In this document: one piece after another, positions 2,621 to 64,000 of the stretch | Position numbering within the stretch: position 1 is the first letter of the stretch | How the letters are laid out: each line of letters opens with the position of its first letter | Source: Ginglymostoma cirratum | Taxonomy: Eukaryota | Assembly: GCA_024137785.1 (NCBI GenBank) | Contig: JAHRHZ010000084.1 | Coordinates: 7,282,093-7,346,092, forward strand | Length of the DNA stretch: 64,000 nt | Reading direction: 5' to 3' | Made by a program: the position numbers and the translations under genes | Notes under the pieces: generated by a model | Seen by the model: only the letters and a program-made list of their open reading frames with translations | The model's database searches: none | Told to the model about the DNA's origin: nothing

Positions 2621-3539
2621 AGGTCCTGCCAATGACCTGAGAGGCTTTCAACATGGTCAACCCTTTTTCATGTAGGTATGGACCCCATTGTCAACTTTTC
2701 TTTCTTCCTGACGCGATGTCTTCCATCCCTTTTTCTTCCATCCCATAGAAATAATAGGGATAAGTTCCTGTTGACATTTATTTGATGCGATCATCCTGGA
2801 ATAATCCTTTGCAGATCGCGTCACCACCACCACCACCACGCCCCGCATCCCCTGTCTGATCCACGATTTTAAATGCCTAAATCTCAATGTGCTATGCAAT
2901 TTCATCTTCAAATGGTATTGATCCTGTCGGTAAAGATCTCAATTACCTGCTCATCTCTAGATGGGCAGGTAACATGCTGGTAATTTTACCGTTGATAACC
3001 ACTTGGACGAGTCTCGAGTTAAAGGCATCATCTGGTGAGAACTTTTGCTGTTTCGCTGAATATTTTTAGTTTCCAGGACCTATGATACTTGTTAGATGAC
3101 ATTAAGAGCAGATGAATAGTGAATAACTATAAAGGAATAGTTGGCACTTTCCTACATCCTTAAAGGATGAATTGATATCACAAGGCATAACATGATTAGC
3201 AGTTCAACATGATAATATAAACCGGATTTATTTCCTCCTCTCATTCGAACTCTTTACTCGTTTTATACCCGACCTCCCAGTTCTAAAATTACTAACGCGA
3301 GTGTATTCATTTTGAAATGACATCAGAGTCTCCAACCTGTTCCACTTTACTCCCAGATTGTCTTTTCAAAGTAATTTTGCAATGCAAAGTAGACTCCAAT
3401 TTACGATCCTACAAGAGGAAATGTTTCCTCTGTTGTGGGTAAAGCCAAGGCAGGGTTTGCAATGTTAATGTACTGCATACTGTGCTGTAAACCTTCGAAA
3501 TGCAGGTCATTGGTGTTTCTTAGTCAATTATTAACACAA

Positions 3540-16189: not shown

Positions 16190-16221
<32 letters not shown>

Positions 16222-16256: not shown

Positions 16257-16339
16257 TCTTTATCAAATAGTAAAGATTGAAGACACTTACATTAACTCCT
16301 TAGCTCTACTTCAAGGGCGTGACCTTGGATCCTTCACAT

Positions 16340-16510
16340 TAACACAGGAGGGTAGATGGGGGCTGATCTTAATATCGCATTCAAAATGCACTGCTTCCGA
16401 CAGCAGGACTTTGGAAAGTCAGCCTAGATACTGCTGATCTCGTCTGGGAGTGGAATTCTAGCCAACCCGATCCTAATACAGGATTGAGGCTGCTACCATC
16501 TGATCAACGG
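16340..16510 (-). mobile_element. DeuSINE-like relic
   Basis: ttccgacagc..gtcagcctaga..gctaccatctga resembles the Deu domain/tRNA head as I recall it; similar copies at 41715-41870 and 60360-60525. Confidence 0.45.
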
Positions 16511-22400: not shown

Positions 22401-24451
22401 TGAGGTGGAGGGCCATTTCAGGTCAGCAGTCATTCTTCATGAACAACCTGTCACGGAAATGTCACTTGTTCTGGAAAGAATCACCTCAAAACCACTGCAT
22501 CATCACACAACTCGCAAAAGCCTGAACTAGTATTCATGTTGTTATGCCAGAACAGCCCTTAGCGCGGTTTAATTCTACGGCATCCAACACTGTGTTGTTA
22601 ATTATTTCAGCTATCAGGACTTCTTTATTTATGCTTCCGAAACAGCTGCAGTCTTAACTAAACTTGGTGAAGATTAAACTGTGAGGAAAAACTGAAATAA
22701 TGAAAGTACTCGCATTTTACTATTGCAAGAAGATCGGAGATTTCAATGAAAGTAAAGAACTGCGGTGGATGCATATTTGTGAGGGTGGCAGAACAAATAA
22801 AAAGGTAACGCGGATTCTTAACAATATAAAGAGAGAGATGGTACATAAAGCAAGAAATTTGCACGAAACATTTGTTAAGAACTAATTAGGTCTCAGCTGG
22901 AGTGTTATATTCAAACCTGCCACCGCTCGTTAAGGAGAGTTTCACGAAAATGGAAACACCACAGAAGATGTTTGACAGAATGTAAACGATGTAGTGGGGC
23001 TTATCAATTTGGAGAAAATGGAGAAGCTAAGGTTTTTCACGTTACAGTAGAGAAGAATGAGGCAAATTGATGCTGGAGAGCAGAGGTCACAACAGTTTTA
23101 AAAGGAAAATTTAAAAAACTGTGACAAAAACAACAGTTTTTGGAAATCCGCAGCAGGTCTGGCAGCATCTGTGACAAAAAAAAATCAGAGTTTCGGGGCC
23201 AGCGACCCTTCCACCGAACGGAAACCAAATAGCAAAGAGTTAAGGCAATTGAAAAAATAACTAGAGGCTACTTAGAAGTAGAAGGGTACAATATAGTATG
23301 TCCCAACGTTCAAAATGTGCATAGTTCAAATGGACGGTGGTGACGAACAGAAGTCCTGAATGATTTACACCGATCGGTTGAGAACAAAACCAATAGAAGA
23401 CCAAACAAATTTGGAAACTACAAGCAGCTGAACAATATGAATAAGCAAAGACCCTCTTCGACTTGATAAACAGTCGAACTTTAAATGTTAACTTTGCTTT
23501 CTTCCCACTGATGCTGCCAGAACTTGAGTTTCTCCAGCAATTTCTGTTTTTGTTCCCGCTTGTATTGTTATCTTTTCTGTTAATTCCTATCAGAAAAATG
23601 TTGATCTCTTCGTTCTGCTTCTCCTCACATTCCATCTGGAAACGCCAACAAACAGCACCATGAATAATACTTTGGTTTTTTTCCAGACTGCTAGATTAAT
23701 AGCGCTAACTGTGAACAATGTGAACAGGGATCTAAATTTCACATCTGCCGTGAGTAAAACTAACATTACCATCGACAGCTCTGGGGCGGATTGGGACATT
23801 ATGCAGGATTACTAATTCTAACTTCGATTCCTGTGATTTATGCTTGAGATCGTATTGGATGTGGAGGTCACAGGCCTAAATAATTTCCAACTCTCGTTGT
23901 CTTGTATGTAGGTGAATACTTCAGGCGGGGTACTAGAGAAATGACCAAGTCTGCGAACTCAACCATTATTTTCCAAATGGGTCAAGGCTCGAACATTGTT
24001 GTTCATAAATTATTGTAAAGCAGGTAGAGTCAGAAAGACATTGGAACTGTTCATCTGACAGTGAGCAGGGAGCCTCCCACTTCCCAGACTTCTGGGACCC
24101 AATACTTGTCATGTGGTAGCTCGGTTCATGCTTATACGCTTGATAAAATTTTCCAATCAATCCATTCAGGACACCATCCTCATCGACAACAATGAACTAA
24201 TGAACTTTTCTTTTAAGTCTGAAATCTGTTCTTGACAGTTACAATACAATACATGACTCTACTTGGCATGAATTCATCAGGTCCGTTTGGATGCCACATA
24301 CTCCAATATCAAATCTATTATATCCTATTTGAGAAGATACTACAATGTCTCTGCATTGTGTAGGTAAACACTGTGATGTTCGTCTTTGGTTGCTAAAGTT
24401 TTCAATACTTCTTGCATTTTACATCGCTAAATTCTTTTTTCTATATCTGCC

Positions 24452-24597: not shown

Positions 24598-24635
24598 CCT
24601 GCAAATGTTGTCATCACACGTTGCTTTTCTGATAG

Positions 24636-25013
24636 CCGCTGAAGTAACTTTGAAGAAAGTGAAACAGTTCCCTAAATTTCTGAACGTTACCAGAGGTGGG
24701 TTTCCGTTCTTTGAAGAAACTCTTGATGTTTAGTGGTGGAGACGGGGTGAGGAGCTGTTTCTGGAAACAAGCAGCAGAGGGCAGTTCAATGCAAACAAGG
24801 GAATAAGTTGAGATAACAAGGTGTGGAGCTGGATGAACACAGCAGGCCTAGTAGCATCATAGGAGCAGGAAAGCTTGACGTTTCGGGCCTAGACCCTTCT
24901 GCTCTTTTTTTTTCTAAACGCCAGTTTTGCTGACACCAGACTGTATTTCTGTGAAGTAAAGCTCCAGTGAAGGTCGATTGAAGATGCAGCTGGCACACAG
25001 CTGACTGTTCATT
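24636..25013 (+). pseudogene. IgSF V-domain pseudo-exon, paralog of 55381-55689
   Basis: AEVTLKKVKQFPKFLNVTRG-[21-nt deletion]-FPFFEETLDV*WWRRGEELFLETSSRGQFNANKG-[PLE insert]-FFLNASFADTRLYFCEVKLQ*RSIEDAAGTQLTVH; stops at 24731 and 24968; donor reads ggaaga. Confidence 0.9.
24810..24900 (-). mobile_element. Penelope terminal fragment inserted in the V pseudo-exon
   Basis: Highly similar to 44254-44340 and 47274-47343 (gagataacaagg..cataggagcaggaaa..gacgtttcgggcct). Confidence 0.85.
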
Positions 25014-30820: not shown

Positions 30821-32029
30821 CTGCGGAAGGCTCAAATAAAGCAGTCAAGGAAAACTGTTCCCATTCATTGACAACACAAAATCTAAAGACGGTAGAGTTA
30901 AGGCGTTGGAAACGAAATGAAGAGGAAATGCAAAGAAGCATTGATTAATATGAGTGATATTGGCCTGGAAAATGCATTAGAGTGGTGGAAGCAGAGACCA
31001 TCGATGATTTCAAACGAGAAATCAATGGGCACATGAAGAAAGTAAACCTGCAGGGTGACAGTAATAAAACAAGGGAGTAGCACTGAGTTGCCTCAAGAAA
31101 ATCCTTCAGGCTCGATAAGCCATGTGCTGTCTTTAATATCTCTAAATTGCTCTAATTTAAAGTTATTTTCATGTATTCATTGATGGCAAACGGGTAGCAA
31201 CATACGAGGCCAACACTTCTTGTCTATCCTAATTGATCTTGAGGTGATGGTGAGTTGCCTTTTTGAACTATTGCATTCCATCTGGCATTGCACCCGTAAT
31301 GCTATTAGGAAAATGGTTTGATTACTTCGACAAGCAACAGCAAAACGACAGAGGTAAAATTCTATGACAGCATAGAAATGGTGACATCCCAAAATATGTA
31401 TTGCTCTTGATCTCCTGAGTGGTAGACGTCATAGGCTTACGAAACACTGGAAAATGGTGAGAGGAAATTTCACACCAGCATTTATTTGCAAGCTCGATTA
31501 TCTGAAGCAGTGAGTGACAATGGACTAACAGGTAATATTAAACATTACTTTCACAGACTGAACAAAATGGCGGAGATGATAAGCTGTCTTGTGCTACGTG
31601 AAGTTTGCTGATTTCAAAAAAAAAGTCATCAAAACCTATATAGCAAGACAAATGTACGGGAAATGCAGATGTAAAGCTGACAAGAGAGAAGCTGAGAATC
31701 CAGAAAAGCATCTGACATTGTATATTAATTATAGATGGAAGCCGAGGCTATCCCATCATATGCCATCAATTGGGTACCAATCACTATTCCATAGGTCAAT
31801 AAGGAATAATGATCTGGAACATTACAAGTAACTCATGTGAATGATGGGAAGAGAAGGTGAAATGTTAATTTTCACCTTCAGTGTTGAGTGTTATGTCCAA
31901 ACATAGTAGGTTGTCAAATACAGCTCTAGAGTTTACTATATAAGACTCTCTGTTCATCTGATTATTCTTAACTGGTATCTTCTCTCTTTCATGACTGACA
32001 TGAATCTCATTACAGCATATTTACCTCCA

Positions 32030-34654: not shown

Positions 34655-34844
34655 CTTGCTGATTACAATGTGGTCTTACTGCACTTGGAAAACTAATCAT
34701 GGAATGTTTGATGATTCTGTGGAATTCCTCCATTATGTCTGCAGTTTTGGTGTTTACTATGCCAAAATATTAAAGTCAAAAATGTAATTAATCTCCATTA
34801 ACTCGTCTTTCAAAGACCCCCACGGGAGGGAACATCCACTATCT

Positions 34845-39000: not shown

Positions 39001-41503
39001 ATGCTTTCATCCACATTGCCAGGAGCTTTCATTATTTTGCACACATTGCAAATAGTGTAACATACGGGACTGATTTCCCCTGATGAATTGGGAGTTTCCT
39101 TTTATTCACCACAACCCACAAAACCACATGTAGGCACTTGGAAGCTTCATGCCTGTGCAAGGAAGACAAACTCTTCCCATGCAAAAGGTGGATGTCGAAC
39201 TGCTGATAGAAACTTTGATTATCATACTGGTTCTAAGTGGGCATTAAATTATTTGAATGTACTGATTACCTGTAATACGTGTCATTCTACTCATCTAATC
39301 ACGGTCCAATTCCATCTCTGACGTTTGCATAGTAAAATAGCACCAGGGCATATGTACAGCAAGGAGGGGAGGTAAACGGATGCCAAACGACTATGTCATT
39401 AAGCTTGTTTAATTAATTATTAACAATTATTAACAATTAATCTTTATATTTTGGAAAATCCTATCTGTTGATTGCTCCAGTAGAATGGCTTCACATCTAA
39501 GTGTGACTCTTTTGGCCTTCTCCTCATGAGAAAGAGGCCATTTGATATGGGCCTAGCATCATTCACATCGAAAAGTTATCGGTTCACTGTCCTGTAGAAG
39601 TCGCCACAACTCTGGTTCACGACCCTTTATTTTAAATCTTTCTCCTCTGTTTGTGCCATGTTTGTTCTGCTAACCAGTCTGTTCTTGTGCAATCTTAACA
39701 TGCTGGATTAATTCAACTGTTTTTTGGAAGCTATTTTACTTGCTCCAAATAACATGGTCTTAAAGATGTAGTTTTTTTCGCAACTGATCTTCTCCCCACA
39801 CACATGCCATACCTTATCTCAGTCTTAAGCCTACTTCCCTTATTATACCATTAACTCATTCGTCATGTGCTTATAACCCTACAACAGTCTTAATACTATT
39901 ACTTAATTCCATTGCTTCTAACTTTCCCTGACTTCTGGTGCTTCATGACATGATGTACAGATGGTCCCTAACGACAAAATAAATTTACCCAATTTCTGTG
40001 GTATCACACTTGTTATTTATCATTCGTTCTACTTTTTTCAACTCCATTGTTTGCCATTGTTCTATTAGTTTTCTGAAACTGCTGCCTTTTCAATTCCAAC
40101 AATTTCTATTTCTCCAATTTCCTTGTGCATTTCTATATGATCAAATCCCCAGAATTAACTGGAGACTTGTGATATCATAGGTCCCTGCCAGAACTGCTGC
40201 TTCTCAGGTTTTTCAGACTTGATACTCTTTTAAATCAGTCTTAAGAGTTGGAATTCTTGCACATTTGTGATTTCCGTCATGCTGTCAGGGTTTTCCTCAA
40301 ACTTTAGAGATCAAAATCACTTCGCCCTTGCAAATTCTTCATATACCTACTTAGTTTTCTTTATTATCAATGAAATCTGCATTGATATCTTCAAGGCCAA
40401 GTTGTATGCATTTACTATTCCTTTTCATGTTGAAGTTTTATAGTCTGCATACGGTTATTTTTGAAAATTGATACACATGTGCATGGTTGTACATGTCGAA
40501 ACATCCTATAAAATTCCAATCCAAACGTCCTTCAACTGTTATATTTACTGGGATATATTCACAAAACAGGTTGAATATCCTTTCACTCAATTTTCCATAA
40601 TCATAATAATTAATAATAATTAACGTTTCAAACACAAAATAATTTCAGTTCTGAAGAGGTCACTGGACCACAAACGTTAACTAGCTTTTTCTACACAGAT
40701 GCTTCTAGTCCTGCTGAGCTTTTTCCAACAGTTTCTGTTTTTGTTTGATTTCCAACATCCGCAGTCCTTTTTTTGTTACAAAATAATTTCATTTTCCTTC
40801 ATAATTTGACCTATACGTCTCATGATTGACTTGATTGAGTGACTGTACAGTCTACTTACTTCACTAATTCTCCTGTGCAGAACAGTAAGGGTTTAACCTC
40901 AAAGATCTCAATGTGTTTCGATTGGGTAAGGACAACGCGAACGCTGGGAATAGGATATCTATTAAACAGCCCGCCTCGAAGGTAAGTTAAAAGTTAAAAT
41001 TGTTTTCCAGCGATTTTCATTCTGCGGCAGAGAGACAGACAGCTATCAATTGTCACTGTTCAGGCTCCAAAGTCAATATCATTTATTGGCTTTTTTAAAA
41101 TATGTTTAAGATGTCTATCGATTAAGCTCGAAAGTGGTGACATTTCCGCCGTCAGATGAACACCATCTTGCAAGGAAATAGTGACCTCGTCTGGTCAGTC
41201 GACTTTAGCATTGAGCGAAGAGGTTTCAAGAATTTCCAAGATTTAGGGAAATAATAAGATCACCATATTTCACTAGAAATAACAGTCAAAGGAAATTTTC
41301 GAACTTGCCTTGATGTCGGGATAACGTTTCCTTACAGAAAAATATATCCATAGCGCACCTTTCATACTCACTGGACTTCCCAAAGTGGTTACATCCAACT
41401 TTTTAAGATTGGTGACATCTGTGATGTAGGAGACGCCACAGCCAATTCGCAAGCTGCAAACTTCCCAAATTATCAATGTGAAAATGACCAGGTAAGCATT
41501 TGT

Positions 41504-41504
<1 letters not shown>

Positions 41505-41538
<34 letters not shown>

Positions 41539-41620
41539 TGTGCGTGTGTGCGCGCGCGCGCGCCTGTGTGTGTGTGCGAGAGAGAGAGACTGTGGGAGAG
41601 GGAGAGTGACAGAGAGAAAG
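41505..41620. repeat. (GT)n(GC)n(GA)n compound microsatellite
   Basis: Directly visible. Confidence 0.95.
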
Positions 41621-44253
41621 ACAGATGTTGCCAAAATGGTAAAATTTGAAGGCACTCGAATTAAATCCTTGGTTCTACTTCAAAGAGGTGGTCATGGACC
41701 CTTCACGTTCACACAGGAGGGTGGGTGGTGACTTACGTTAACGTCGCATGTGTAAAACAGTGCTTCCGACAGCGTGACTTGCTCAGTCCTGCCCTGGAAA
41801 GTCTTGAAGTGGGGCTATCGCCAAACTACTCCTTAGACGGAAGTGAGTGTGCTACCATCTAATAAACAGCTGGCATTCAAATCAATTTATGAGAATAAAT
41901 AGCTGCAGGTGACCTGATCAATGTAATTTGTATTACGAAAAGATCTGTCTGGATTGATCATTCAGAGAAAATGTTTCCACTTATGATCGAAAGATAAACT
42001 ATATGACGTACATTTAAATTGACATAGTCAAATTGAAAAAACGTTTATGCATACGAAACAGAAACAATCTAAAGGATATGCAAATTGCATCGTTCAAGTC
42101 TAGTAGGGAGCAGCAAAAATGACAAAATATATCAGATGATCTGAATGCTCTATGCCTATACGAGAATTGCATGTGTTTGTGAGTTATGAAAACAAAATAT
42201 GACCAGATCACACAATTGGCTGACCAACATATGCCAGGAAAACATAAATTAACGTTCAGTCATAGCCCTTCATCACACCTGGAAAAGTAAAAGCAAAGTC
42301 ATCTTAAACGACAATTTATATTTGTACAAATATTTTGAACACAAACATGTACCAGTGTATCCTGAAGGATTAAACAAAATCACGCTGTCAAAGCAATGTG
42401 GATAAAGATAGTGATGAAACATGGATTCTTGGTGTGGATTTAAAGAAGAATTGTGATTGAAAAGGAAGAATGGATGAGCAGAGACGCTTAGGATGGCAAT
42501 TTTGGAGCAGGTAAGCGAGGAAATGATGGCAAAGCACATATAGGATACAACATTCCACAGATATGACAATGGGGAGTGGAGTTACTGACAGGAGGCATAC
42601 TGAAGTCGGGAATGACAAGCTCAAAAGGAAACTTAAATGAGTATCAGAATTTTAAATTTGAGCCAATAAAGAATAGGAAATATTCGGAGGTCTACCAGAA
42701 CTGGGGAGATGGGTGAGCACGACTTTGTGCAGTATAGCGTATGGATGGCAGAGTTTTGGAAGCAATAACTTTGCTATAAATTCGAAGTTGGTGGCACAAT
42801 CACTGCATTTAGTGAAAACGGTTAAAATGTGGCTTGTGAGGCTATAGAACTTTGGCAACCGTCTGTTTTACTCTTTTTCTCCTTTAGATTATTGATTCCA
42901 TTAATTTCTATTTACTAATATGGGAACTTGAACGATTGAGGTGGGATGAATACAGATAATGTTGCAGACGTAGAAGGAAACAATGTTTGCAAAGAAGATA
43001 ATTCACGGTCTCCCCACAGAAGAAGCAATTGGTGAAGTTAATTGACACGCCGTGCTGGGATACAAAAAGGAATTACTCGACTGTTGCAGAAGGACCGAGC
43101 GTGAAATGAAGGGAACAGAAATGGAAAAATAGCCATATTGTATGAGCGAGGAAATACAACTGTCCCTGCATTCCCATTTCACATCTCAACGTAGCTCCAT
43201 TTGTATGTACATGTGTGTGAATGTGGCCACAGTACCAAGTCAAGACAGTCGAGAAGTGGAGCAGCTGTGGCAGAGGAAGGTAATCCAGGGCTGCAAATTC
43301 TATTTCTCTTTGCAACAAATAGCTCCCATTGCGGGAAACCGAGTGGATCCGGAATTAGGTTTCTCTGTAATCTGAGGTGACATGTTCGATTCCAAGAGAC
43401 TGCCCACAATGACGATGTGAGTGTCTACGGATCTGTATGCGATGTCTATTGGTGTATGTATGCATATGACTCTGCGTGTGCCTGTGATTTGTGCAACATA
43501 ATAGTGACCTTACCTCATTGGTTTTAAAGTGCTTTGACACCTCCTGACGACCATCGTTAAAAATACAAGTCACTTTACTTGTCAATGTGTGTGTATGCGT
43601 CTTTTTTATAAGTAATTTGTTTTTAGCCCATGCTAAAGTCGATGTATGTATAACTTATACCTAGACCAATTCAGTCATCGTTTCATATTTATTGAGCTAC
43701 ATTGATTCTGCAACTTCTTTCGTTTGAAATCCTCTTTACTATTTTAAATATTAGTATACAATATTTTTAATGCCTCCAGTACAAGACATTGTCTCTCTTC
43801 CAATTCTGATCACTTGTCCAAGTCAAATTTTCTCCATTCCGCCTTTGGCAACCATGTCTTGAACTAGACGGGTTCATATATCTGGAAGCTCATCATGAAC
43901 CAAGTCTGTTTCTGTCTTCTCTTTTAAAACCCGTCTCTTTGACAAAGCTGTTTACATCAATAAATTACTTCTGTCCGTCCGTAACATTCCTTGCCAAAAG
44001 CCTTCATATTTTACTGCTTTGTATGCGCAATACAAATGTAACTTGCTAAACGCCTGTGTCCTGTGGTTTTGCTTATGCGTGGGAGTGTCTCCATTACCAT
44101 TTGCTCCCTTCATTAATGCTAGTTTTATTTGTAACATATTCCGCTTTGAAGGAGAGTTCTGATCACGCAGGCAGTACTTTCGACTTATGCTTCGGATGAG
44201 CTATTATCGCTGCTCAAGTTTGAACTACTGCAACACATTTATGTTTCAAGAAA

Positions 44254-48069: not shown

Positions 48070-49070
48070 CATTGTACTTCTGTGTTCTAAATGTTACTTG
48101 CCACTTATGAGTCCAAGACTGAGTGGTGTTTTGGTTTCGCTGCATTTGGATATGCTCAAATTCAGTTTCTGAGAAGTTGTAAATAATAATGAAGATTCTG
48201 CAGTTATCAGTAAACATGTGTACGTTTAACTTTATACTGCAGGGAAGATTATTAAGGAGGAGGTGGTATGGTTGGACCTGAACACTGCCCTATCCTGCAG
48301 CGATATCCTGGGCTCTGAAATGATTGCCAGACAAAAAGAAACACAATCATCTTCCCTGTGGCAGTTATAAATTCAATTCAGTGGAGAGTTACATTTACTT
48401 TTAACCCCACTCCACTGTGTCTTATTCCCACTGACCTTGATGTCTAGGCTTCCTCCAGACCATCCATGGTCAAAGGCTGCCTTCATATCAAGGGCAATCA
48501 CTCTCATCTCACCTCTGGCTCTAAGATGATACTTGGACCAAAGCTCAATTGTGCTCTGATGAAGAGTAGATTTGATGGAACTCATATTGAACTTCAGTGA
48601 GCAGAGTGTTGTTGTGCAAATTTCACTTGATAGCATTGCTGACGACACTTTTCAGCTCATTGCTGAAGACAAGGAGTAGGCTGATGAAGTGTTCTTTGTC
48701 CAGATTTGATTTCTCTCTGTTTTAGTTTTTGGACAGAGGATATTTAAGTAGGTTACCTTTCAGTTTGTTGGGTAGAAACTGCTGATGTGGACTTGTTCAA
48801 ACAGTTTGGCTCGGGCCCTTCCATATTCTGGAACACAAGTCTCTCATCGTACTGTAAGGGGGTTGCCAGACCGCAGCATTTTTTGCACTGCCTGTGGCAA
48901 GATACGCTTCAAATACCTGAGATACACCCAGACCGGCATTGGGGAATAGCAGCTCTGTTCCAAGATAAATATCATGAGCTTCTTCAATTTTTTCATGAAA
49001 ATCCCGAGGGAGAATAATTGATTTGTATATACGAAGCACAGCTGGCCACTTACTGGGGTTCATTGAGGAG
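48070..49070 (-). mobile_element. CR1-clade LINE relic
   Basis: Minus ORF 48373..48648 ARGEMRVIALDMKAAFDHGW (RT motif). Confidence 0.8.
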
Positions 49071-54108: not shown

Positions 54109-55217
54109 AGAGGTTAGTTACATGCATGATTGTGAAAAGTATTGATTGCATAAACTACTGAGATACCTGCGTCTTTTCAAAAGAGGCAGTTACTGGACAG
54201 ATTACTTAAAAACAAAACTTTTCAACTTCACAGTGGCAATGAGCTCCGGCTGAGCCATTTTTGCTTTTGAACGAATCCTCTGATGATGGTTACCACCGAG
54301 ATTCCTCAATACATTTTATCTATTAATTCAGATCAAATAACTTACTCACAAAACAAGCACAACAAACTGAGCGTTGATGAAATCTGCTCTTGCTTTCACA
54401 AAAGTTCCCTTTCTCCTTCCACTTGGTTAAATGGGCCTCTTCTAATCTTTTTTCTCCTCGCACTTCCACTTTCAGGTATCACCAAACACAATGCTGGGAA
54501 TATAACTTGTGTATTATGTGGACTAATAGCTTCAACTGAAAACGAATTGGAAATTTTTTTTTGCAATGTCCAGCTAAAATAAAATTTAAACTGCCCTTAT
54601 AAGCTCTGAAGTGGAGAATTAGAGATGAATATAATTATTAATCCAGTGGTTGCTGCTGGAAAATCGCGTGTTTGAAAGTTATTAAAGATGGCGGTGGCGT
54701 GAAACTCAGAGGTCCCAGGACAAAGAGTTGCTTACGTGAAGAGGAATGGTTTAGATAAAGGTGCTGGAGTACTGCAGCCTGAAGCGATACTTTCTGCAGT
54801 AAGCTAATAATAAAAGGTAAGTGTTGACAAAGAAGGTTTTTAGAACTGAGTGACCTTGTGGTGACTCTAAACAAAACAAAACCGTTAATCATCAGATGAA
54901 AACATTTCAGCAAGGAGTTAGGAGGGGCTCTCTGTCTAAAGAACTGTCACAGAATAGTACAAGCACATCGAATACGCCACATTTGTCATGTGGTGTTGCA
55001 TGTTATGGTCTCATGTTTAATATTTCTGCTTATACAACTCATTTGTTCCTCCCACCCAGCCACTCGGAATACTGCCCTCGTTTAAATCAAGGAGCCCACT
55101 CTTTTATCTCTTTTGCAAAATAATGTTGAGAGCAGCAATTCTAACCATGGTTATTCTGAGTACGGCTTGGTCAGATACTTTTAAACGTTATGAACTGCCC
55201 TTTTAAAATAACTTAGA

Positions 55218-55380: not shown

Positions 55381-55689
55381 TTGTCACTAAAGTAACTTCG
55401 AACAAAGTAGATCAGTTTCCCAAACTCTTGAAGGCGGCCAGGGGTGACAACTTTTCCATGTTCTGTACTTTTCCCATACTTGAAGATGTTCCTAAAGTAT
55501 TTTGGTGGAGGCACAACGAGGAATCGTTTCTCGAACCAGACAGCAGAAAATTTTTTCATGTCCAGAAAGGAAGGGGCTCACTTCATGTTCTCAATGTCAC
55601 TTTTCCAGACTCTGGAACGTATCATTGTAAGATAACATATCAGCAAACCACACTTGGAGCTGAAAGTGGATCATTGCTAACAGTGTGCG
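55381..55689 (+). CDS. IgSF V-set domain exon with J-like G strand (non-rearranging V-C1 receptor; SIRP/NCR3LG1/antigen-receptor-like)
   Basis: Acceptor ttttcttcag|, donor |gtaagt, phase 1-1; B-strand Cys (SMFC), C-strand Trp (VFWWR), DSGTYHC, ESGSLLTV. Confidence 0.92.
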
Positions 55690-55897
55690 GTAAGTGAAAC
55701 TGCATCAGATGCAGGCAAATTATGTGATCTGAGCTTTTATAATTAGAGGAAAATCCAGTGATACCCAATTCTTGTTGACCTCGCTGTACAATGGACATTG
55801 ATTTCCTTTTGGCATTTTGCGCCATTTCTCCGCATCTATTCCACGGCTCATTGTGATCATGATATGGAGGTTCCGGTGTTGGACGGGGGTGTACAAG

Positions 55898-56045
55898 GTC
55901 AGAAATCACACGACAACAGCTGATAGACCAACAGGTTTATTTGAAAACACAAGCTTTTGGAGCCTCAGTCTGAAGAAGAAATAAGGCTCCGAAAGCTTAA
56001 GACTTCAAATAAATCTTTTGGACTATAACCTGGTGTCATGCGATT
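55898..56045. mobile_element. Intronic hairpin Penelope-terminus mini-element with hammerhead-like core
   Basis: cacacgacaacagctgatagaccaacaggtttatttgaa vs ttcaaataaatcttttggactataacctggtgtcatgcg; CTGAAGA..GAAAGCTT at 55970. Confidence 0.75.
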
Positions 56046-56184
56046 TCTAACATTATCATTATGACCTTGTACTGTGTTGTTAATGTAATGATTGGCTTTT
56101 TGGTGCGGGAGCAGTTGACATTGCACCAAAAGAGTGAAAAAGGACAACTGTTGAAATCTTGGGATGAAGTTAATTCATGCAATA

Positions 56185-56720
56185 AGATAAAATAAAGAAC
56201 TGTCGATGCTGGAACCCTGAAGCAAAAATAGAAGTTGCCAGAGAAACTCAGCAAGTCCAGCAATATCTGTGTGATATCAGATTCAGCTGATCTTTAAAGT
56301 CCAGCGATCCTTCTTCAGAATGGTTCTGCAGAAAGGGCGCTAGACTCGAAACGTTAACTCACCTATTGCTTCATATATAGCCTCAAAATAAGAGGAAGAA
56401 GATTTAGGACGGAGGGATCTGGAGGAAATTCTTCACGCAAAGGGTTGTCATTCCGTGGAATTCCCTGTGCAGTGAAGCAATGGAGGCTATCTACCTCGTT
56501 GAATACTTTAAGGCAAAGATAGATAAATGTTTGAACAGTGAAGTCATTAAGGGTTATCGTGAGTGGGCGGGCAAGTGGAGCTGAGTCCACGAAAAGGTCA
56601 ACCATGATCGTACTGATTGGCAGAGCATGCTCGGCGGGTCAGTGACATACTGCTGCAACTACTTTTCATCTTCGAATGCTGTCAGACCTAATGAGTTTCC
56701 AGCAATTTCTGTCTTTGTGT
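56185..56720. mobile_element. Intronic hairpin mini-element split by a CR1 3' fragment (about 56375-56670)
   Basis: Left arm 56190-56270, back-to-back cores 56295-56360, right arm resumes at about 56676. Confidence 0.65.
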
Positions 56721-57021
56721 CGTGGTGCTCGATTTACATCTAACCAAAATGATGGTGCTAAAATGTGACAATGGAAACAATGTTGATACAAAAGCAATGT
56801 ACTAGAGCTATTGAAAATTTGGAATGCTAACAGAAATTACTTGAAACGTGTCTGAGCATCGACAGAGGTAATACTACATAAGAATTAGAAATAAGAATGG
56901 GCCTGCGCCCCTCAAGTTTACTCAGCTACTCAATTAAATTATGCCTAATCTGATTGTGGTATCAACTGCACGTTCCTGTACGCCTTGAAATTCTTGGACT
57001 TCCTCATTAATCAAACAGGCA

Positions 57022-57055
57022 ATTAACGTTTCAGGTCATAATCTTTCATCAGAAC
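57022..57055 (-). ncRNA. Minimal type I hammerhead ribozyme-like motif (intronic, antisense)
   Basis: Reverse complement reads guu-CUGAUGA-aagauuaugaccu-GAAACGUU-aau. Confidence 0.5.
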
Positions 57056-58503
57056 ATTTAAAATACCTCCTAAATCAATTATTTTAAACATGGTTGTATA
57101 GAACACTTAATAATTTCCAACAATGTGCATTGATTTTAGGTAAAGCTGAATGATAATATACCACAGCCATCAATATTCAACCATCACAAGGTAACATTTC
57201 GACCTCCAAATTGCCGATCAAAACATTCTGTAGTAAATCCTTCAAACTTTGAGATGGATATCAAGGAAAATTAATCCAGAGGCTCAGTGGAATAGAATAA
57301 AACTGGACAAAGGAAGTTCAGGTACAATTCAATCATAACCTAAGTGAATGATGGGGTAAGTTCAAGGACGCAATTGCATAGTGTTTTGGCTGTGCATTTT
57401 CCCAAGACTAACAAGCTTGAAACGCCAACGCTCTTCTAACAAACGAATCACATGATTCAGTGAGATGGCAAGTGTTGTTCTTGCTGTCACTGCTTGATTC
57501 TATCCCCAATCCAAAAGCTTTCAGGGCACTGAAGTTACCCCTTGGCCCTGTTTGACGCTCTGCCGTCTACCCACTGGATCGTTTCTTATGCAGGCAAAAC
57601 AGGCAAAGTGAAGGAAGGATAGTACCAAACATATCTAAAAAAAAACTTTGTATCCCTGCATTTGCAATTTATTAATTCGATGCAATGGGACTTTTGACTG
57701 GAGACCAAGATAATACTTTTCTTTCTCCACGAGAATTCTGTGATATCTGAAAGAGATCCTTGGGGAAAATGTAACATTTCTCAGCTTTTGCTGGCAATAA
57801 CCTTTAGCATAAATTTGGAAGTGGATCAAATATCTAATTTACTAATTCGGTCGCATTAAAAATTCAGAAGCCTTAAACGTGCCGAAAACAGTTGTTAAGG
57901 ATATTGATTCTAATAAACATCGGAACAATGCAAATCCATTTCTATTACCCTCAGCTAAGCACTGATTGCAGATTGAGAGGGCACAAGTTCACTTCAATAA
58001 ATAGTGAATTAGAATTGATATTTCAAATGGCGTAGGTTCAGACCAAGAAGGGAATGTGAATTGGGAACATAAATGACTCAGCAATGACCTTATTGAAGGT
58101 TGGATCAGTCTCAAAGGGTCGAATTGCCTACCCATTGGACGACCTACTCCAGCTTCCAATTCATATGTAAACAGGCAGAATCTGTTCCAGAAAAACAAAT
58201 GTTCAACAAAGCAATTTCTCTTACAGAAGGGTAAAAAGCCTGGGATTACGTAATACCTCCGCCTTATTAGAGATTTTCTACCCAGGTTCATCCTCCTTGT
58301 GCATCGTTTGCAAAATATCCCAACATTTCGCCATGCATTTCTTTAAAAATAAATGCATAGACAATGTTTAAAATACGATCACAACGAAAACTGCTGTCAC
58401 TTTAGGAATGGAACAGTATTGTTGCGGAAGGGGGTGGATTAGAAAGTTTGAAAGAAGAAAATTTTAATTATTCTTTTTTAAAATGTTTTACTTCCTGTTA
58501 CAG

Positions 58504-58800
58504 TTCCTCCGACCCTCCTGAAAATCATTTCCGTAGAAAGGATTTCAGGGAATTATTTGAAATTCGTGTGTAAAACGATTGCCTTTTATCCGGAGGATTT
58601 AGGAATCTCCTGGTTAAGAGATGGTGTCAAAATTCAGGCCGGAATAGAAACTGTGAAAAACAAGACTGTACATGGTCTTTATGCAGTTACCAGTTCGTTG
58701 GAAGATGCACAGCCTGTGCCGAACGGTGTCGTTTATACTTGCTTGGTATCTCATGCCTGTCTTAAGGTGCCCACAAGCGTCAGCTACACCTTTAATCGAG
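58504..58800 (+). CDS. IgSF C1-set domain exon
   Basis: Acceptor cttcctgttacag|, donor |gtaaga, phase 1-1; FVCKTIAFYPEDLGISWLRDG, GLYAVTSSL, YTCLVSH C1 hallmarks. Confidence 0.93.
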
Positions 58801-59399
58801 GTAAGATTGAAAATTGTCCAAGTAGAGAGTTGGGGGTTGAAGTGGGAATAAGATCCTCAATGCGTATTTCAAGACTTTGGACAGCTGTTCTAATTCAAGT
58901 ATAGTGCGTGAATGCGACAGTTGTTTATTCTCAAAGCCGCAGCGATGGAAACACTATAAAATATTCGAAGCTGTCTCGCAGGTGCAGGTTGGCGAATAGC
59001 TCCCTGCAATGACTGGAAATTGAATGTTCACGTGAAAGCTACTGAAAAGTTGAGGACTTGACAATTTTTGTTTTGCTAAATGAAGCGAATGTACTGATAA
59101 AATGGATTATTTCCGTCCAAGTAATTTATACGAGCTGTACATGTACATTGTTCATCCTATTCAGCTGATCTCAGCACAACAATGTCTTTAATCCACACTT
59201 CGAAAATTCTGCCCTCTCCATCTCCCACCGTGTCTTTCCTACTTTAAAACGCTTCTTGAACCTTATTTCTTTCTGTCCTAAGATCACTCAATTTTTGGAT
59301 GATAATGCTCTGTGAAGTGTCTGAGAATTATTTCAAGCCGGTTAAAGGCGCAATATAATTGCAAGTTATTCTTGTTATGTACACTAAAAGTTGCAGTAG

Positions 59400-59790
59400 G
59401 TGTTACCTGGGATGTCCGGAGAAAGGTGTCATTGAACGTACAAACCCATAAGTACTCTGCAGGGTAATGAGGGAAGGATGTTTCCAGCGGTGAAAGGTCT
59501 GGTACCAGAGAACCCAGTTTCGGAATAATGGGCAGGTCATTTAAGACTAAGTGAAGAGGAATTTCTTCAACCACAGGGTGGTGAATCTTTGGATTTCTCC
59601 AGCCCAGAATGCTGAGAAAAATCAGTGACTGAGAGTATGAAATTCTGCGATTAACAAATTCCCAGAGGTTATGTAAATAGTGCAGAAAATCGCACCGAGG
59701 AAGATCAGTCATAACCTAGTTGAATGGCGAAACATGCTCGAGGGTCCCAAAGTCTACCCCTGCTCCGTTTTATTACGATTCTTTGTAACA
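59400..59790 (+). mobile_element. CR1 LINE 3' end
   Basis: aggaatttcttcaaccacagggtggtgaatctttgg (RNFF..RVV..W) plus CR1 tail. Confidence 0.75.
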
Positions 59791-61785
59791 GCCGCTAGGA
59801 AGTGACAACTTTGCCAGATCTCGTAACTGTTGTACATCAGACTGGTTTAAGACAAAGAGTGAATAGGTGCACATTCCTTTAAAATAGCAAACAATGCTCG
59901 TAAGCTGACGGGAGTTTGCTGTGCCTTTAAATCATGAAATGCAATCACTCCATAAAATGCATTTCTGATCTTCAGTTGATGTCCTCTGATGCTCATTAAG
60001 GCACATATACAGCTGTTCCCGACGAAATTGAAATGGTCTAACCTAGCTAACAGACGAGTTATGCTGAGAGACAGCTTTGCAACTGATCGTGTTGCGCAAG
60101 AAGCTCTGCACATGTAACTCACTGTGTTCCACACTCATAGATGTATATCAGTCATAGCAACATGTGCATAAAATGCATCTAAGTAGCAGGTTTCCAGGAA
60201 TGTTCCGTAAATGAACAGGAGGTGTGGGCTCAATTCCTACTCTCTGCCAGATGTGTGTCATCTCATCTCTAAGCATGTTGATTAGAAAATATCAACGGAA
60301 GAATTATTGAACAGGAAGTAGAAGATAAGTCTCTCGTTGTCTGCTGGGATGGTCGTGAGGGTAGAGTGGGTTTTTATTGAATTTTTGCTCCAGAATGATA
60401 CAGCTTTCCTTCACGACTGCAGCAGAGCGTCGGTCTGGAAATATGTCATGAAGGCACTTCGGCGGGACTGGAGCCCATGTACTCCTACCTCACGAAAAGA
60501 GTGCTACCGCTGAACCAACGCTGACATATCTGTATTACTGTCATTATTTAAATATATATTGTACGAAGCCTGAGCCGAAAACTTTCTAATATAGCCAGAA
60601 TTCTTATCTCAAACATGAAGACTAAAGACAGCAGTTGTGGTGTCACTGTTTTATTCCCAGTTCTGAGTTTCATAGATGAAGAGTCAGAATTCATGCTGCA
60701 TCGTTCCTGTCAACGGAAGCATGTTTTGGCAATGCAACACGCGTAACCATTTCCAATCACTTCAGTAATAGACGATAAAGTTTTGCTAAAGAAAGTAAAT
60801 ATGTATTGCAACGCGATTTTACTTCATTTGTAATTGAGGGACAATGATGAAACACCATTATTGCCAGAGTCCTCCCAAAAGACACAAGCCTTTATAAAAG
60901 GACTTAAAATTCCCCTATTTTAACTGTTGTTTTGAGGTCAGCTGACAGAAAGCACTGATTGGGTTTCTGTGCTAAAAAATTATTGTTTGTCATGAACGGT
61001 TTCAAGATACTAGCAGACTATTGCGAATTGTCCACATGTGACTACTAGTTAAAACTGTAACTCCCTTGTAAAACTGCTCCGACACACCCATTCAGACAAC
61101 CAAAAGAAAGTATGGGTACACAGGTGGATGGAAAGACTGGGAAGACAGTTTATTGACTCCTGTCCACCTGCTGAAATGATCCTTTTGGCTTATCGGGCTT
61201 GGTGCTCTTCCATCTTCTTTCTTCAAGTACTTTCAGTTGCTTTCATGAGGCACAGGCCGAGTGACAATTCATAAAGGTTCTGACTTATTAGATTGGCACG
61301 AGAGATTACAACAACAAATGAGGGAAAGCACGCAGCTTTCTTCAGTTATGTACTGCTTTTCTAACGGTGAATAAAAGGGCAGCTCCCTCATTTCAGAGGT
61401 CTAATTGGTTCTCATCAAACATTCACTCCCACAAGCTGTTCAGCCACCTGGGAGACAAACCCACAGGCAGAGGCGATTGTCATCGACAACTGCTCACCAT
61501 TCCAGACTCTGTTCAGCCACTTGCTACCAGTTAACTGCCATTTGTACTCCAGTTGTCTGCAGCTGAACTTCCCCACTACAGACACCATGACAGCCAAAGG
61601 TGTGCACTAGTGTTTTGTTTTAGGGTGGCAGTCAGTTTTAGCACTGCTACCCAATGATTCATCTATCAAGGGTTAACAGCAGCAAGCTAAATAGTTTTGT
61701 TTTGTTTAATTTAATATTCGCTGCGTGGTATACAAAGTCATACGATTACAAAATTGCCTTAAAAGTCACTTTGCAGTCACTAGGC

Positions 61786-62078
61786 GGAGATGATGGCCTA
61801 GTGGTATTAGCGCTGGACTGTTAATCCAGAGACCTGGGCTCATATCCCAGACACATGGCAGAATTTGAATTCAATACATGTCTGGAATTAAGAATCTGTG
61901 AATCATTGTCGGTGGCGAGGAAGAACCCCATCTGGTTCACTAATGTCCTTTAAGGATGGAAACTGCTGACATGTGACTCCAGGCCCACAGCGATGTGGTT
62001 GACTCCGGACAATTGTGTGTGGTCAATAAATGCTGCCTAGCCAGCGATGCTCTCATCACGTTAATGAGTTTTTAAAAA
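61786..62078 (+). mobile_element. tRNA-derived SINE
   Basis: TGGCCTAGTGG A box; same body and tail as 27205-27562. Confidence 0.85.
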
Positions 62079-62669
62079 GCAAAGGTATTTGTTCGTGTTT
62101 TCTCAATCTGGTTGAGAAAAGCCACAGACGAAGCTCTTGTTTAAATGTTGAAACAATTAACTCTTTATATCCTTGCGAGTATTTTCTTTGATTTATGAAT
62201 TAAGTTGTTCATCTCACGAAAAAATCCAAAATTTCTAATACGTTATATTGAGCTTGGTTGTGTTAAGATACTCAGCTGCACAAGATAGCAACGGAGTAGA
62301 ATGATCCAGCTGGAGCTCCTCTGCTCCGCTCGGTCGTTTTTTCTTTTCCTTTTTATTTCTTCTTCTCTAATCCCTTCTCCCATCATCACACACCTGGCCT
62401 GGACGCCAAAGCGGCGTCGGTGGTCAGCAGAGATGCTAGCGGCCAGGGTAACAATGCCAGTGACCAGTGGTCACAGCGGGGACAAATGTCACCAGTGGCC
62501 CAAAGTAGGGACACCAGTGCTCAGCGGCTGCAGTGTGAACACCAGCAACTGGAGTGGCAACGCTGGTAAGCAGCAGCCAATGTCAGCACGCTGGCAACCA
62601 GTGACCAGAACAGGAATGCCAGCAAGCCCTTGTGCGAAGCAACGAAACCAGCGGCCAGAGTAGATGGCA

Positions 62670-63730
62670 TTTACTGCTGCCATGTCAATGTGTGGTGCAG
62701 TTGGTGAATATTTGAGGCTGTGAATTGGGATCAAATCAAGTGGGCTTCTTTGCCTCAGGTGTCGTCCAGCTTCTTGAGTGTCATTAAAAATGTATTCATT
62801 CAGGCAAATCATGAGTATCCCATCAAATTCCTCAAGTCTTCCCGGTAGGTAATGGATAGATTTTGAAGAAATAAGAGGCTGCAGAATTCGAAGCCTCCAT
62901 CTTAGTCAAGTATATGTCTAGCCCAATTCAGTTCCTGGTCAATGTAACCCTTGGTGCGTCAAATGTGGGAAATTCAGCAATCAGGTGCCAGTGATTGTAA
63001 AGAGAGATAGTTAGATTCTCTCTTGTTGGAAATGGTCATTGCCTGGTACTGGTGAGGTGTGAATGTTACTTGTCACTTTTCAGCTCAAGATGGGATTGTG
63101 CTTTGGTTTTCCTGCACTTGGTCAAGAACTTTTTCATTTTCTGAGAAGCTGCAAATGGTATTGAAAACTGTATGATCATGCACGCTGTTGAGTTTATGTT
63201 AGAGGCAAGTTCAGGAAGAAGCAGGCAAGGTGGTTGGGACAGGACACTGTTATGTTGTTGCATAGTAACATCCATTATTGAAATAATTGACATATAAAAA
63301 AGCAAATCGCCCTTTCTGCTCGATATGACTCCAACCAATGGTATGTTCTAACGAGCCTCATCACCACCAGCCCTTCACCTCCACATCCCACCCTATTCCC
63401 ATTGACTCCAGTTTCTCTAAGGCTCCTTAACACCATACTCGGTCAACTCCTTAGTCTTAAGGGCAGACACATTCACATCACATCTGGAGTTCAACTCTTC
63501 GATTGATGCTTGAACCAATACTACAATGCAGTCAGAAGTTCCTTCACTGTCACTTGGTCAAAATCCTGGAATTCCCTCCCTTACACTATTATTGCTCGGT
63601 CAAATCAATGCATATGGACTGCAGTGGTCCAAGAAGGCAACTCTCCATCACCTTCCCACAGGCAACTAGTGATGGACAATAAACACTGGACCGTTAGGGA
63701 TGCCCATGTCCCACAGGTGAGCAAAATAAG
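62670..63730. mobile_element. CR1-clade LINE relics (minus strand to about 63510, plus-strand 3' tail about 63530-63730)
   Basis: Reverse similarity to 32650-33550; tail similar to 33820-33995. Confidence 0.7.
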
Positions 63731-64000
63731 ACCTAGTGGAACTCAAATTGAACCTCAGTGTTTTTGTTATTGAAGTACAAGTTTCACCTGATGAAGCTGT
63801 CCCTGAACTTTCTATCTCTTTGTAGAAACTAAACAGTAGTGTAATGGGACGTTAATTGCCCAACGTTTCCTTTGGGTTGCTTTTTGTATATAGGCATACC
63901 TAGATCACTTTTCATTGCTGTGTGGACACCAGCATTGTAGCTTAGCACAAAAGGCTTGGTTAGGTTGCCTGCCTGGTTTGGGAAGACACATCTGCACTGT

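What the first reader, a model, noticed from the sequence alone, without database searches (positions are those of the whole stretch)
55381..58800. Non-rearranging VJ-C1 antigen-receptor-like gene in a multigene cluster
Seen: a single exon encodes the whole V domain including a J-like strand, no RSS was found, and a true C1 exon follows. It lacks the WYQQ and FGxG motifs typical of Ig/TCR. Established: C1-set domains are limited to Ig, TCR, MHC/B2M, tapasin, SIRP and some B7 members, and germline VJ-C1 genes (e.g. shark UrIg) are discussed as relatives of the pre-RAG receptor. Inference: this is a member of an expanded, fast-evolving cartilaginous-fish innate/NK-type receptor family that may be uncharacterised. 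It is the best candidate for a novel system here.
Basis: partly seen in the sequence, partly recalled or inferred. Interest (0 to 1): 0.8.

Follow-up and report, generated by a model that had tools for sequence, protein, structure and literature searches.

The report
Shark SIRP-like V-C1 receptor gene, outer half
These are the leader, variable-type and constant-type exons of one more copy of a large shark, ray and chimaera family of non-rearranging immune receptors; pipelines label the family "SIRP-alpha-like", no paper I could search describes it, and this copy has lost the normal splice signal after its leader exon.

Summary
Two phase-1 exons on the + strand, 55381-55689 and 58504-58800, have good splice sites. 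They encode a compact V-type domain with a J-like last strand and a true C1-set domain. There is no RSS.

The gene is not an orphan. Both exons fall inside a large family that I found only in cartilaginous fishes. NCBI pipelines name its members inconsistently, mostly "SIRP-alpha-like". Relatives are built signal peptide, V, one C1, membrane anchor, then either a four-tyrosine ITIM-type tail or an Arg-bearing anchor with a short tail.

New for this copy:
- The leader exon is 55123-55174. Its homologous splice donor reads AT, where a paralogous relic in the same window reads GT.
- Three near-invariant family residues are changed, including the second Gly of the J-type GxG.
- Its tree branches are about twice as long as those of its nearest relatives.
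- The V domain, by profile and by fold, resembles shark IgNAR V and TCR V-alpha more than SIRP V.

The membrane and tail exons lie beyond the window. Expression could not be tested, because no run was listed. This scan has met the same family many times elsewhere in this genome. SIRP orthology is unproven.

The parts
55123..55174 (+). Leader exon: ATG, 17 codons (MLRAAILTMVILSTAWS) and the first base of a split codon.
   Evidence: Translation. It matches family leaders (M at -7 and L at -4 from the Trp). It aligns without gaps to the leader of the paralogous relic. It lies 206 nt upstream of the V exon.
55175..55176 (+). Position of the homologous leader splice donor. It reads AT here (TCAG|ATACTT), where the paralogous relic reads GT (TCAG|GTCCGT). 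In-phase GT alternatives exist at 55160-61 and 55187-88.
   Evidence: The phase arithmetic was done on the sequence. There is no RNA evidence.
55381..55689 (+). V exon, phase 1: the last leader residues plus a compact V-type domain with a J-like G strand. It carries Cys28, Trp41, DSGTYHC, sequons NFS and NVT, and an extra Cys at the end.
   Evidence: Identity is up to 59% over the matched stretch to family V domains. AlphaFold2 pLDDT is 90.6.
55690..58503 (+). Intron between the V and C1 exons (2.8 kb), with no RSS next to the exon.
58504..58800 (+). C1-set exon, phase 1: PPTLLKI..., FYP, Trp 13 residues after the Cys, YTCLVSH, sequon NKT, and an extra Cys after SHA.
   Evidence: Identity is 65-68% to Heterodontus and Scyliorhinus family C1 domains. 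pLDDT is 84.7. The top fold matches are MHC class II beta-2 domains.
24232..24282 (+). Leader exon of a dead paralogue (LTVTIQYMTLLGMNSS plus G) with its donor GT intact at 24281-82.
   Evidence: tblastn; sequence; alignment.
24635..25009 (+). V pseudo-exon of the same dead paralogue. It has a 21-nt deletion that removes the B-strand Cys, an insertion of about 93 nt, several stop codons, and a lost donor.
   Evidence: (E 3e-21 to P0160).
31542..31595 (+). Weak relic of a cytoplasmic tyrosine-motif exon, with both tyrosines replaced.
   Evidence: tblastn, E 0.13 to P0161 residues 334-351. Weak.
2929..3036 (+). Relic of a family membrane-anchor exon followed by GT. It probably belongs to another upstream copy.
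   Evidence: tblastn (E 0.005, 53% over 36 residues to P0154 218-253); sequence.

Best explanation
The stretch holds the leader, V and C1 exons of one germline-fixed (non-rearranging) type I membrane receptor. It belongs to a family spread through sharks, rays, skates and chimaeras.

In the family (shown for relatives):
- A compact V-type domain with a J-like last strand sits on a single C1-set domain.
- This is followed by a membrane anchor.
- The tail is either a four-tyrosine tail with ITIM/ITSM-type motifs, or the anchor carries an Arg and the tail is short.

This is the layout of paired inhibitory/activating receptors such as SIRP-alpha/beta. By inference, the V domain binds a ligand at its membrane-distal loops. 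ITIM forms would recruit SH2 phosphatases. Arg forms would pair with an ITAM adaptor.

For this copy, the membrane and tail exons lie beyond the window.

Both Ig exons are intact, but the homologous leader donor is AT. I therefore read it as a gene that was functional for most of its history. Today it is either spliced from an in-phase cryptic donor 15 nt upstream or was disabled recently.
For: Exon structure, phases and open frames.

Domain types:
- Pfam V-set and C1-set are above their cut-offs.
- The C1 hallmarks of PMC2785349 are met (and the sequence).
- The AlphaFold2 models have pLDDT 90.6 and 84.7.
- C1 fold matches are MHC II beta-2 domains at TM about 0.8.

Family membership:
- All single-domain hits of an all-against-1.8-billion HMMER search with the V exon are family members, at 35-59% identity.
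- The window's C1 exon matches the same proteins at 35-66%.
- Every member I looked up is chondrichthyan, from 11 genera.
- In the trees, the window's V sits in a supported clade (SH-aLRT 96) with Heterodontus and Scyliorhinus members. Its C1 sits in a 15-row clade (SH-aLRT 98).

Family architecture and tails: alignment A1 and the sequences.

No RSS.

Leader donor G to A.

Long history as an open frame: 4.0% of random substitutions in these 200 codons would create a stop. About 100 neutral substitutions would leave the frame open with probability about 0.02 (my rough estimate of the number of substitutions comes from the branch lengths).
Against: - No RNA evidence: none was listed by the look-up of sequencing runs, so splicing and expression are unknown.
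- The membrane and tail exons were not seen. No anchor exon lies in 58801-64000.
- The leader donor lesion argues for relaxed constraint.
- So do three changes at positions conserved in at least 90% of relatives: Gly to Asn after the WW, the second Gly of GxG to Glu, and Pro to Leu in PPTPLK.
- So do terminal branches of 0.40 (V) and 0.34 (C1), against roughly 0.04-0.26 for clade mates.
- The window is littered with dead paralogue pieces.
- The A at 55175 could also be an assembly or individual variant.
Confidence: 0.85

Rival explanations
1. It is already a pseudogene: a decaying copy in a cluster full of relics. It makes no receptor.
For: The donor is AT where the paralogue has GT. Three near-invariant residues are replaced. 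Terminal branches are long. Dead V, leader, anchor and tail relics lie in the same window. Earlier notes s1-879489 and s1-879485 (unchecked) report a truncated Arg anchor exon just beyond the window.
Against: All 200 codons of the two Ig exons are open, and four of the five splice sites are good. Every core residue and all C1 hallmarks are kept. The open frame is unlikely if the long branch had been neutral. Two in-phase GT donors could rescue leader splicing; the one at 55160 would leave an 11-residue hydrophobic core. Arg anchors with short tails are a regular, presumably working form in other species (P0013, P0164, P0165, P0129).
Confidence: 0.4
2. The family is the cartilaginous-fish counterpart (co-orthologue) of the SIRP genes of bony vertebrates, so this is simply a shark SIRP.
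For: Most pipeline names are SIRP-alpha-like or SIRP-beta-like. The layout is V then C1, with ITIM-tailed forms and forms bearing a positively charged anchor residue, as described for SIRP-alpha/beta (PMC12975943; PMC2785349). The full-length family profile hits the SIRP-alpha ectodomain at 101 bits and SIRP-gamma at 90 bits. Lambda light chains score about 86 bits and UrIg2 122 bits.
Against: Relatives have one C1, not two. The V domain is about 12 residues shorter between the Trp and the second Cys. The model shows no C'' strand. A V-only family profile scores shark IgNAR V (48 bits) and TCR V-alpha (45-48 bits), while no SIRP V reaches the listed top 60, i.e. below 39.5 bits. The SIRP total sums two matched stretches, so its margin over light chains is not meaningful. 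A word search with a family tail found no bony-vertebrate SIRP (a weak test). Members without tails get B7-H6-, tapasin-, Ig-lambda- or TCR-beta-like names, so the SIRP label is not robust.
Confidence: 0.3
3. It is a germline-joined Ig light chain or TCR chain, or a member of the UrIg/UrIg2 lineage of non-rearranging antigen receptors.
For: It has a VJ-type single exon followed by a C1. The C1 exon's best single PDB domain hits include lambda C and C-mu. UrIg2 ranks high with the family profile.
Against: Relatives carry ITIM tails or Arg anchors, which Ig/TCR chains do not. UrIg and UrIg2 have several to nine or more C domains and a canonical VJ (PMC12227049). The UrIg2 score is a sum over three C domains, none above 19 bits for the window's C1. 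This copy has no RSS, no FGxG and no WYQQ (and the sequence).
Confidence: 0.04

Closest known systems
SIRP family (SIRP-alpha/PTPNS1, SIRP-beta, SIRP-gamma)
   Same: A non-rearranging V domain with a J-like strand, followed by true C1-set domain(s). Family members come as ITIM-tailed forms and as short-tailed forms with a positively charged anchor residue. It is the pipeline's usual label.
   Different: One C1 instead of two. A shorter V without a C'' strand, closer to IgNAR V and TCR V-alpha in profile and fold searches. Arg rather than the SIRP-beta type residue. CD47 binding is unknown. Orthology and synteny are untested.
Teleost novel immune-type receptors (NITR)
   Same: From my own knowledge, not tested here: germline V domains with J-like motifs, large fast-evolving clusters, and ITIM-bearing and charged-anchor members.
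   Different: The second NITR domain is of the I type, not C1. NITRs are known from bony fish only.
UrIg / UrIg2 (non-rearranging shark antigen-receptor-like genes; PMC12227049; PDB 9dmx)
   Same: A single-exon VJ with a split leader, followed by C1-set exons. Elasmobranch.
   Different: UrIg and UrIg2 have many C domains, are linked to the MHC or the antigen-receptor complex, and are single genes. This family has one C1, signalling tails and many copies.
IgNAR variable domain (VNAR) and TCR V-alpha
   Same: A compact V fold without a C'' strand. They are the top Foldseek hits (E about 3e-7, TM 0.75-0.80) and the best single-domain profile hits (48 and 45-48 bits).
   Different: Those are assembled by RAG from V, (D) and J segments. 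This one is one exon. On the Z scale they tie with the NCAM I-set domain (all about 14), so the resemblance is of shape and length, not proof of descent.
B7-H6 (NCR3LG1) and tapasin-related proteins
   Same: A V-type domain plus a C1-like domain. They are pipeline labels for several members. The B7-H6 C domain hits the window's C1 at 34 bits.
   Different: They have no J-like GxG strand, and they lack the ITIM/Arg-anchor pairing of this family. The labels go mostly, though not only, to members with short or missing tails.

Membership tests
Chondrichthyan SIRP-like V-C1 receptor family (pipeline-predicted, unnamed) | V exon with the family signature (QFP, C, WW, DSRK, DSGxYxC, G-x-G-S-x-L-T-V) | tested here: met
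   Identity is 35-59% to members. All core positions are kept except Gly to Asn after WW and the second Gly of GxG to Glu. The V sits in a supported clade with Heterodontus and Scyliorhinus members.
Chondrichthyan SIRP-like V-C1 receptor family (pipeline-predicted, unnamed) | A single C1 exon starting PPTPLKI, with FYP, Trp and YTCLVSH | tested here: met
   Identity is 65-68% to Heterodontus and Scyliorhinus members. The one deviation is PPTLLK.
Chondrichthyan SIRP-like V-C1 receptor family (pipeline-predicted, unnamed) | Membrane anchor followed by a four-tyrosine ITIM-type tail, or an Arg anchor with a short tail | not testable with these tools
   No anchor exon lies in 58801-64000.
SIRP (SIRP-alpha/beta/gamma) | Ectodomain of one V-set and two C1-set domains (PMC12975943, PMC2785349) | tested here: not met
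   Relatives go from one C1 straight to the anchor. One skate member has two C1 domains that look like its own duplication (P0140). Only one C1 exon was found in the window.
SIRP (SIRP-alpha/beta/gamma) | Full V-set D1 of the SIRP type | tested here: not met
   The model has no C'' strand. The V-only profile lists IgNAR V and TCR V-alpha but no SIRP V in its top 60. The window's V exon alone hits SIRP-alpha V at only E 0.009.
SIRP (SIRP-alpha/beta/gamma) | Orthology by phylogeny and synteny | not testable with these tools
   No SIRP, IgL or TCR reference sequences could be obtained. The window holds no other gene.
C1-set immunoglobulin domain | (F/Y)(F/Y/H)P at the BC loop, 13 residues from Cys to Trp, xVxH after the F-strand Cys (PMC2785349); Pfam PF07654; C1 fold | tested here: met
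   The exon has FYP, 13 residues and LVSH. Pfam gives 34.5 bits against a cut-off of 21. The top fold matches are MHC II beta-2 domains.
Rearranging or germline-joined Ig/TCR | RSS, or a footprint of joined V and J with WYQQ and FGxG, in an Ig/TCR-type gene | tested here: not met
   No RSS abuts the exon. The exon reads WWRH and LGAE. Relatives carry signalling tails.
UrIg / UrIg2 | A VJ exon followed by several C1 exons (PMC12227049) | tested here: not met
   There is one C1 in the relatives and in the window. No single UrIg2 domain scores above 19 bits against the window's C1.

The most novel reading that the evidence does not exclude
The compact VJ-type domain of this family is a surviving germline cousin of the V domains of IgNAR and TCR alpha/delta. 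It would be a second line, independent of UrIg, of never-split VJ-C1 receptors descended from the receptor that the RAG transposon invaded. Its signalling tails would then show what that ancestor did before rearrangement existed.
Probability: 0.07. Interest if true: 0.85.

Novelty: new variant of a known kind. Interest (0 to 1): 0.35.

Why it matters
C1-set domains are confined to antigen receptors, MHC and a few associates. Germline VJ-C1 genes are therefore the natural place to look for relatives of the receptor that existed before RAG. Cartilaginous fishes carry a large, fast-turning-over family of such genes with inhibitory and Arg-anchor forms. No paper in the held library describes it.

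This locus adds three things:
- The V domain is of the short IgNAR/TCR-V-alpha-like shape, not the SIRP shape.
- It is probably the missing outer half of an Arg-anchor copy noted in the next window.
- It shows how copies in the cluster are lost: a splice-donor hit while the Ig exons are still intact.

As a single gene it is ordinary. The family deserves a proper description.

Tried and rejected
- The word search with the V exon alone was blank, because it sees only proteins of 56-178 residues.
- A word search with a family cytoplasmic tail (P0176 residues 262-368), aimed at SIRP-alpha of bony vertebrates, found only chimaera and shark proteins among 42 candidates. This is a weak test and no evidence of absence.
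- The look-up of sequencing runs listed no run and its cap is one. Read laying was therefore not used and expression is untested.
There was therefore no DNA of relatives, no synteny, and no access to the exons beyond the window.
- I looked for an anchor exon in 58801-64000 by hydrophobicity and by tblastn with 40 family proteins. There was none.
- A C1-only family profile was not built. There were too few C1-only proteins, and I did not type cut-out pieces of stored proteins.
- Reference phylogenies against IgL, TCR, UrIg, NKp30, SIRP, B7-H6 and tapasin were not possible.
- Pfam on six other long open frames of the window found nothing.
- The spliced (joined) protein model was never searched or folded. 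The exons were handled one by one. The codons of both exons were pooled only inside one script, to count stop-creating substitutions.
Full report
**What is there.**
On the + strand, a pyrimidine tract and AG precede base 55381. An open frame then runs to 55689 and is followed by GTAAGT. A second open frame runs from 58504, again after a pyrimidine tract and AG, to 58800 and is followed by GTAAGA. Both exons are phase 1, meaning one base of the first codon comes from the exon before. Only that frame is open.

The first exon reads VTKVTSNKVDQFPKLL...FSMFC...VFWW...DSGTYHC...LGAESGSLLTVC. The second reads PPTLLKI...FVCKTIAFYPEDLGISW...YTCLVSHA...SYTFNR. Pfam calls them V-set (E 7.2e-9) and C1-set (E 2.6e-8), both above the curated cut-offs.

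**Leader exon.**
A 17-codon leader, MLRAAILTMVILSTAWS, plus one base lies at 55123-55174, 206 nt upstream of the V exon. It matches family leaders: the Met is 7 residues and the Leu 4 residues before the Trp, and the Trp falls at position 16-17.

**Non-rearranging.**
The V exon carries its own J-like G strand and runs straight into a splice donor. A scan for heptamer, 12/23 spacer and nonamer found nothing next to the exon. It found one match inside the intron on the other strand, against 60 such matches in the whole window.

**C1 is real.**
The exon has FYP, exactly 13 residues between the B-strand Cys and the Trp, and LVSH after the F-strand Cys. These are the three hallmarks given by Hatherley et al. 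(PMC2785349). The AlphaFold2 model (pLDDT 84.7) matches MHC class II beta-2 domains best, at TM about 0.8.

**The V domain is a short one.**
There are about 41 residues between the Trp and the second Cys. The model (pLDDT 90.6) has strands A, A', B, C, a one-residue C', D, E, F and G, and no C''.
- Foldseek ranks shark IgNAR V domains first (E about 3e-7, TM 0.75-0.80). TCR V-alpha, BTLA, NCAM and titin follow.
- A V-only profile of the family gives IgNAR V 48 bits and TCR V-alpha 45-48 bits as the best single-domain, full-length matches. No SIRP V is among the 60 listed.
- The window's exon alone hits IgNAR V at E 3e-4 and SIRP-alpha V at E 0.009.

**The family.**
The word search with the V exon was blank because of its length filter, so I ran the exhaustive HMMER search with that exon. 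Apart from giant multi-Ig proteins, whose scores are sums over many domains, every single-domain hit is a protein of 130-490 residues at 35-59% identity.

The members I looked up come from Scyliorhinus, Heterodontus, Heptranchias, Mustelus, Pristis, Hypanus, Mobula, Narcine, Amblyraja and Callorhinchus. No bony vertebrate appeared. I saw no annotated nurse shark protein.

NCBI's names for them are inconsistent:
- 'tyrosine-protein phosphatase non-receptor type substrate 1-like' (SIRP-alpha-like), the commonest label;
- 'signal-regulatory protein beta-1-like';
- 'natural cytotoxicity triggering receptor 3 ligand 1-like';
- 'tapasin-related protein-like';
- 'immunoglobulin lambda-1 light chain-like';
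- 'T cell receptor beta chain-like';
- 'HLA class II DO beta-like';
- 'uncharacterized'.

The window's C1 exon is 65-68% identical to the C1 of Heterodontus and Scyliorhinus members.

The alignment of 32 members (A1) shows the architecture:
- a signal peptide;
- a V domain ending in G-N-G-[ST]-G-S-x-L-T-V, with a full FGNG in several members;
- one C1 starting PPTPLKI;
- a membrane anchor;
- then one of two endings.

One ending is a tail with four tyrosines in a repeated pattern: x-Y-A-x-L-x-L, T-V-Y-A-Q-T, L-T-Y-A-A-L and x-Y-A-E-[VI]. Two of these fit the ITIM rule and one fits the ITSM rule. The other ending is an anchor with an Arg near its start, a D/E-H at its end, and a short tail (P0013, P0164, P0165, P0071, P0131, P0129).

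This is the logic of paired inhibitory and activating receptors, as described for SIRP-alpha and SIRP-beta (PMC12975943).

**Where this copy sits.**
In quick maximum-likelihood trees the window's V falls in a supported clade (SH-aLRT 96) with Heterodontus and Scyliorhinus members and one unnamed contig ORF. Heptranchias lies just outside. Its C1 falls in the matching 15-row clade (SH-aLRT 98). That clade holds both ITIM and Arg-anchor forms, so the ectodomain does not tell which type this copy is.

**What is odd about this copy.**
1. Leader donor. The donor expected by homology reads AT (TGG TCA G|ATACTT). The leader of a dead paralogue in the same window aligns without gaps and reads TCA TCA G|GTCCGT. 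Two GT dinucleotides in the same phase exist.
   - The one at 55160 would give a leader shorter by five residues, still with an 11-residue hydrophobic core.
   - The one at 55187 is a poor match to the donor consensus.
2. Replaced residues. Three positions that are the same in at least 90% of relatives are changed. The Gly after WW is Asn. The second Gly of the J-type GxG is Glu. The Pro of PPTPLK is Leu.
3. Long branches. The terminal branches are 0.40 (V) and 0.34 (C1). Clade mates have about 0.04-0.26 measured from the same node.

Against decay, the two Ig exons keep all 200 codons open. About 4.0% of random substitutions would make a stop. If the roughly 75 amino-acid changes of the terminal branch had been neutral, that would mean about 100 nucleotide changes by my rough estimate, and the frame would stay open with probability about 0.02.

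So the gene was under selection for most of that branch. Any inactivation is recent, or the base is a variant or an error.

**The rest of the gene.**
No anchor exon lies between 58801 and the window's end. Earlier notes of this scan (s1-879489, s1-879485) place an anchor exon with an Arg and an early stop 2.8 kb beyond the window's end. They describe it as 'the tail end of an activating partner whose outer part is not visible'. The exons studied here are most likely that outer part.

**Cluster.**
Within the window the only other family sequences are relics on the same strand:
- a leader at 24232-24280;
- a V pseudo-exon at 24635-25009, with a 21-nt deletion that removes the B-strand Cys, a 93-nt insertion, stops and a lost donor;
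- a weak tail-exon relic at 31542-31595;
- an anchor-exon relic at 2929-3036;
- a doubtful C1 trace near 48.8 kb.

Earlier notes report intact and broken members from 409 kb before the window's start to 96 kb beyond its end, and on other pieces of this genome. The scan has therefore met this family many times. Those notes are unchecked leads.

**Is it SIRP?**
For:
- the pipeline label;
- the V-C1 order;
- the ITIM and charged-anchor pairing;
- a full-length profile score of 101 bits for the SIRP-alpha ectodomain and 90 bits for SIRP-gamma.

Against:
- That score sums two matched stretches and is no better than what the same profile gives two-domain lambda light chains (about 86 bits) or UrIg2 (122 bits over three stretches).
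- Relatives have one C1, not two.
- The V is of a different, shorter type and does not favour SIRP V.
- The tail word search reached no bony-vertebrate SIRP (a weak test).

I could not bring reference sequences into the session, so the decisive trees and synteny remain undone. I therefore file it as working like a SIRP-type paired receptor, with SIRP membership not shown.

**Literature.**
Five searches of the held library found the UrIg/UrIg2 papers, the SIRP structure paper and reviews. None of the papers I opened describes this cartilaginous-fish family, and none of the listed titles suggests one. The library lacks most subscription journals, so this is not proof that the family is undescribed. 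UrIg and UrIg2 differ in having many C domains and in being single, MHC- or antigen-receptor-linked genes (PMC12227049).

**Limits.**
Expression was not tested: no run was listed and read laying was not used. The joined spliced model was deliberately never searched or folded, and each exon was treated alone.

Noticed in passing
window 55686-55688 and 58758-58760: This copy has two cysteines beyond the two domain disulfides. One is the last residue of the V exon (LLTVC). The other follows the C1 hallmark (VSHAC), where relatives have Ser. In Ig domains the N-terminal linker and the FG loop lie at the same end, so the two could be close. Chimaera members also have the first Cys but not the second.
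   Followed up: no
window 13316-14046 (+), 988-1431 (-), 4886-5167 (+): Repeated open-frame fragments share the stretch YLEYTS.HPPSCKNAIPYSQFLRL.RICSQDETFHS, and one nearby reads ...NLVYCI.CSQCSLLYIG. To my eye they look like retroelement debris (reverse transcriptase plus GIY-YIG-type end). Pfam found nothing for the two tested.
   Followed up: partly
window 16012-16434 (+) and 41276-41728 (both strands): Two (CA/TG)n microsatellites are each flanked by a similar open frame (…LLQGRDLGSFTLTQEGRWGL… and …LLQRGGHGPFTFTQEGGW…). This suggests two copies of one mobile element that carries the repeat.
   Followed up: no
window 34788-35505 and 62246-62905: Two G+C-richer stretches have long open frames on both strands and share a short motif (…AEQRSS…). 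They are probably copies of one repeat. Pfam found nothing in the two frames tested.
   Followed up: partly
window 48801-48884 (+): A very weak trace (E 0.6) of the start of a family C1 exon, including …CQTAAFF, broken by a stop. It may be a further relic between the dead paralogue and the gene studied.
   Followed up: no
relatives P0140 (Amblyraja) and P0031, P0125, P0137, P0144: The family varies in domain number. One skate protein has two nearly identical C1 domains in tandem. Several predicted proteins go from V straight to the anchor with no C1 (exon skipping, loss, or a prediction error).
   Followed up: no
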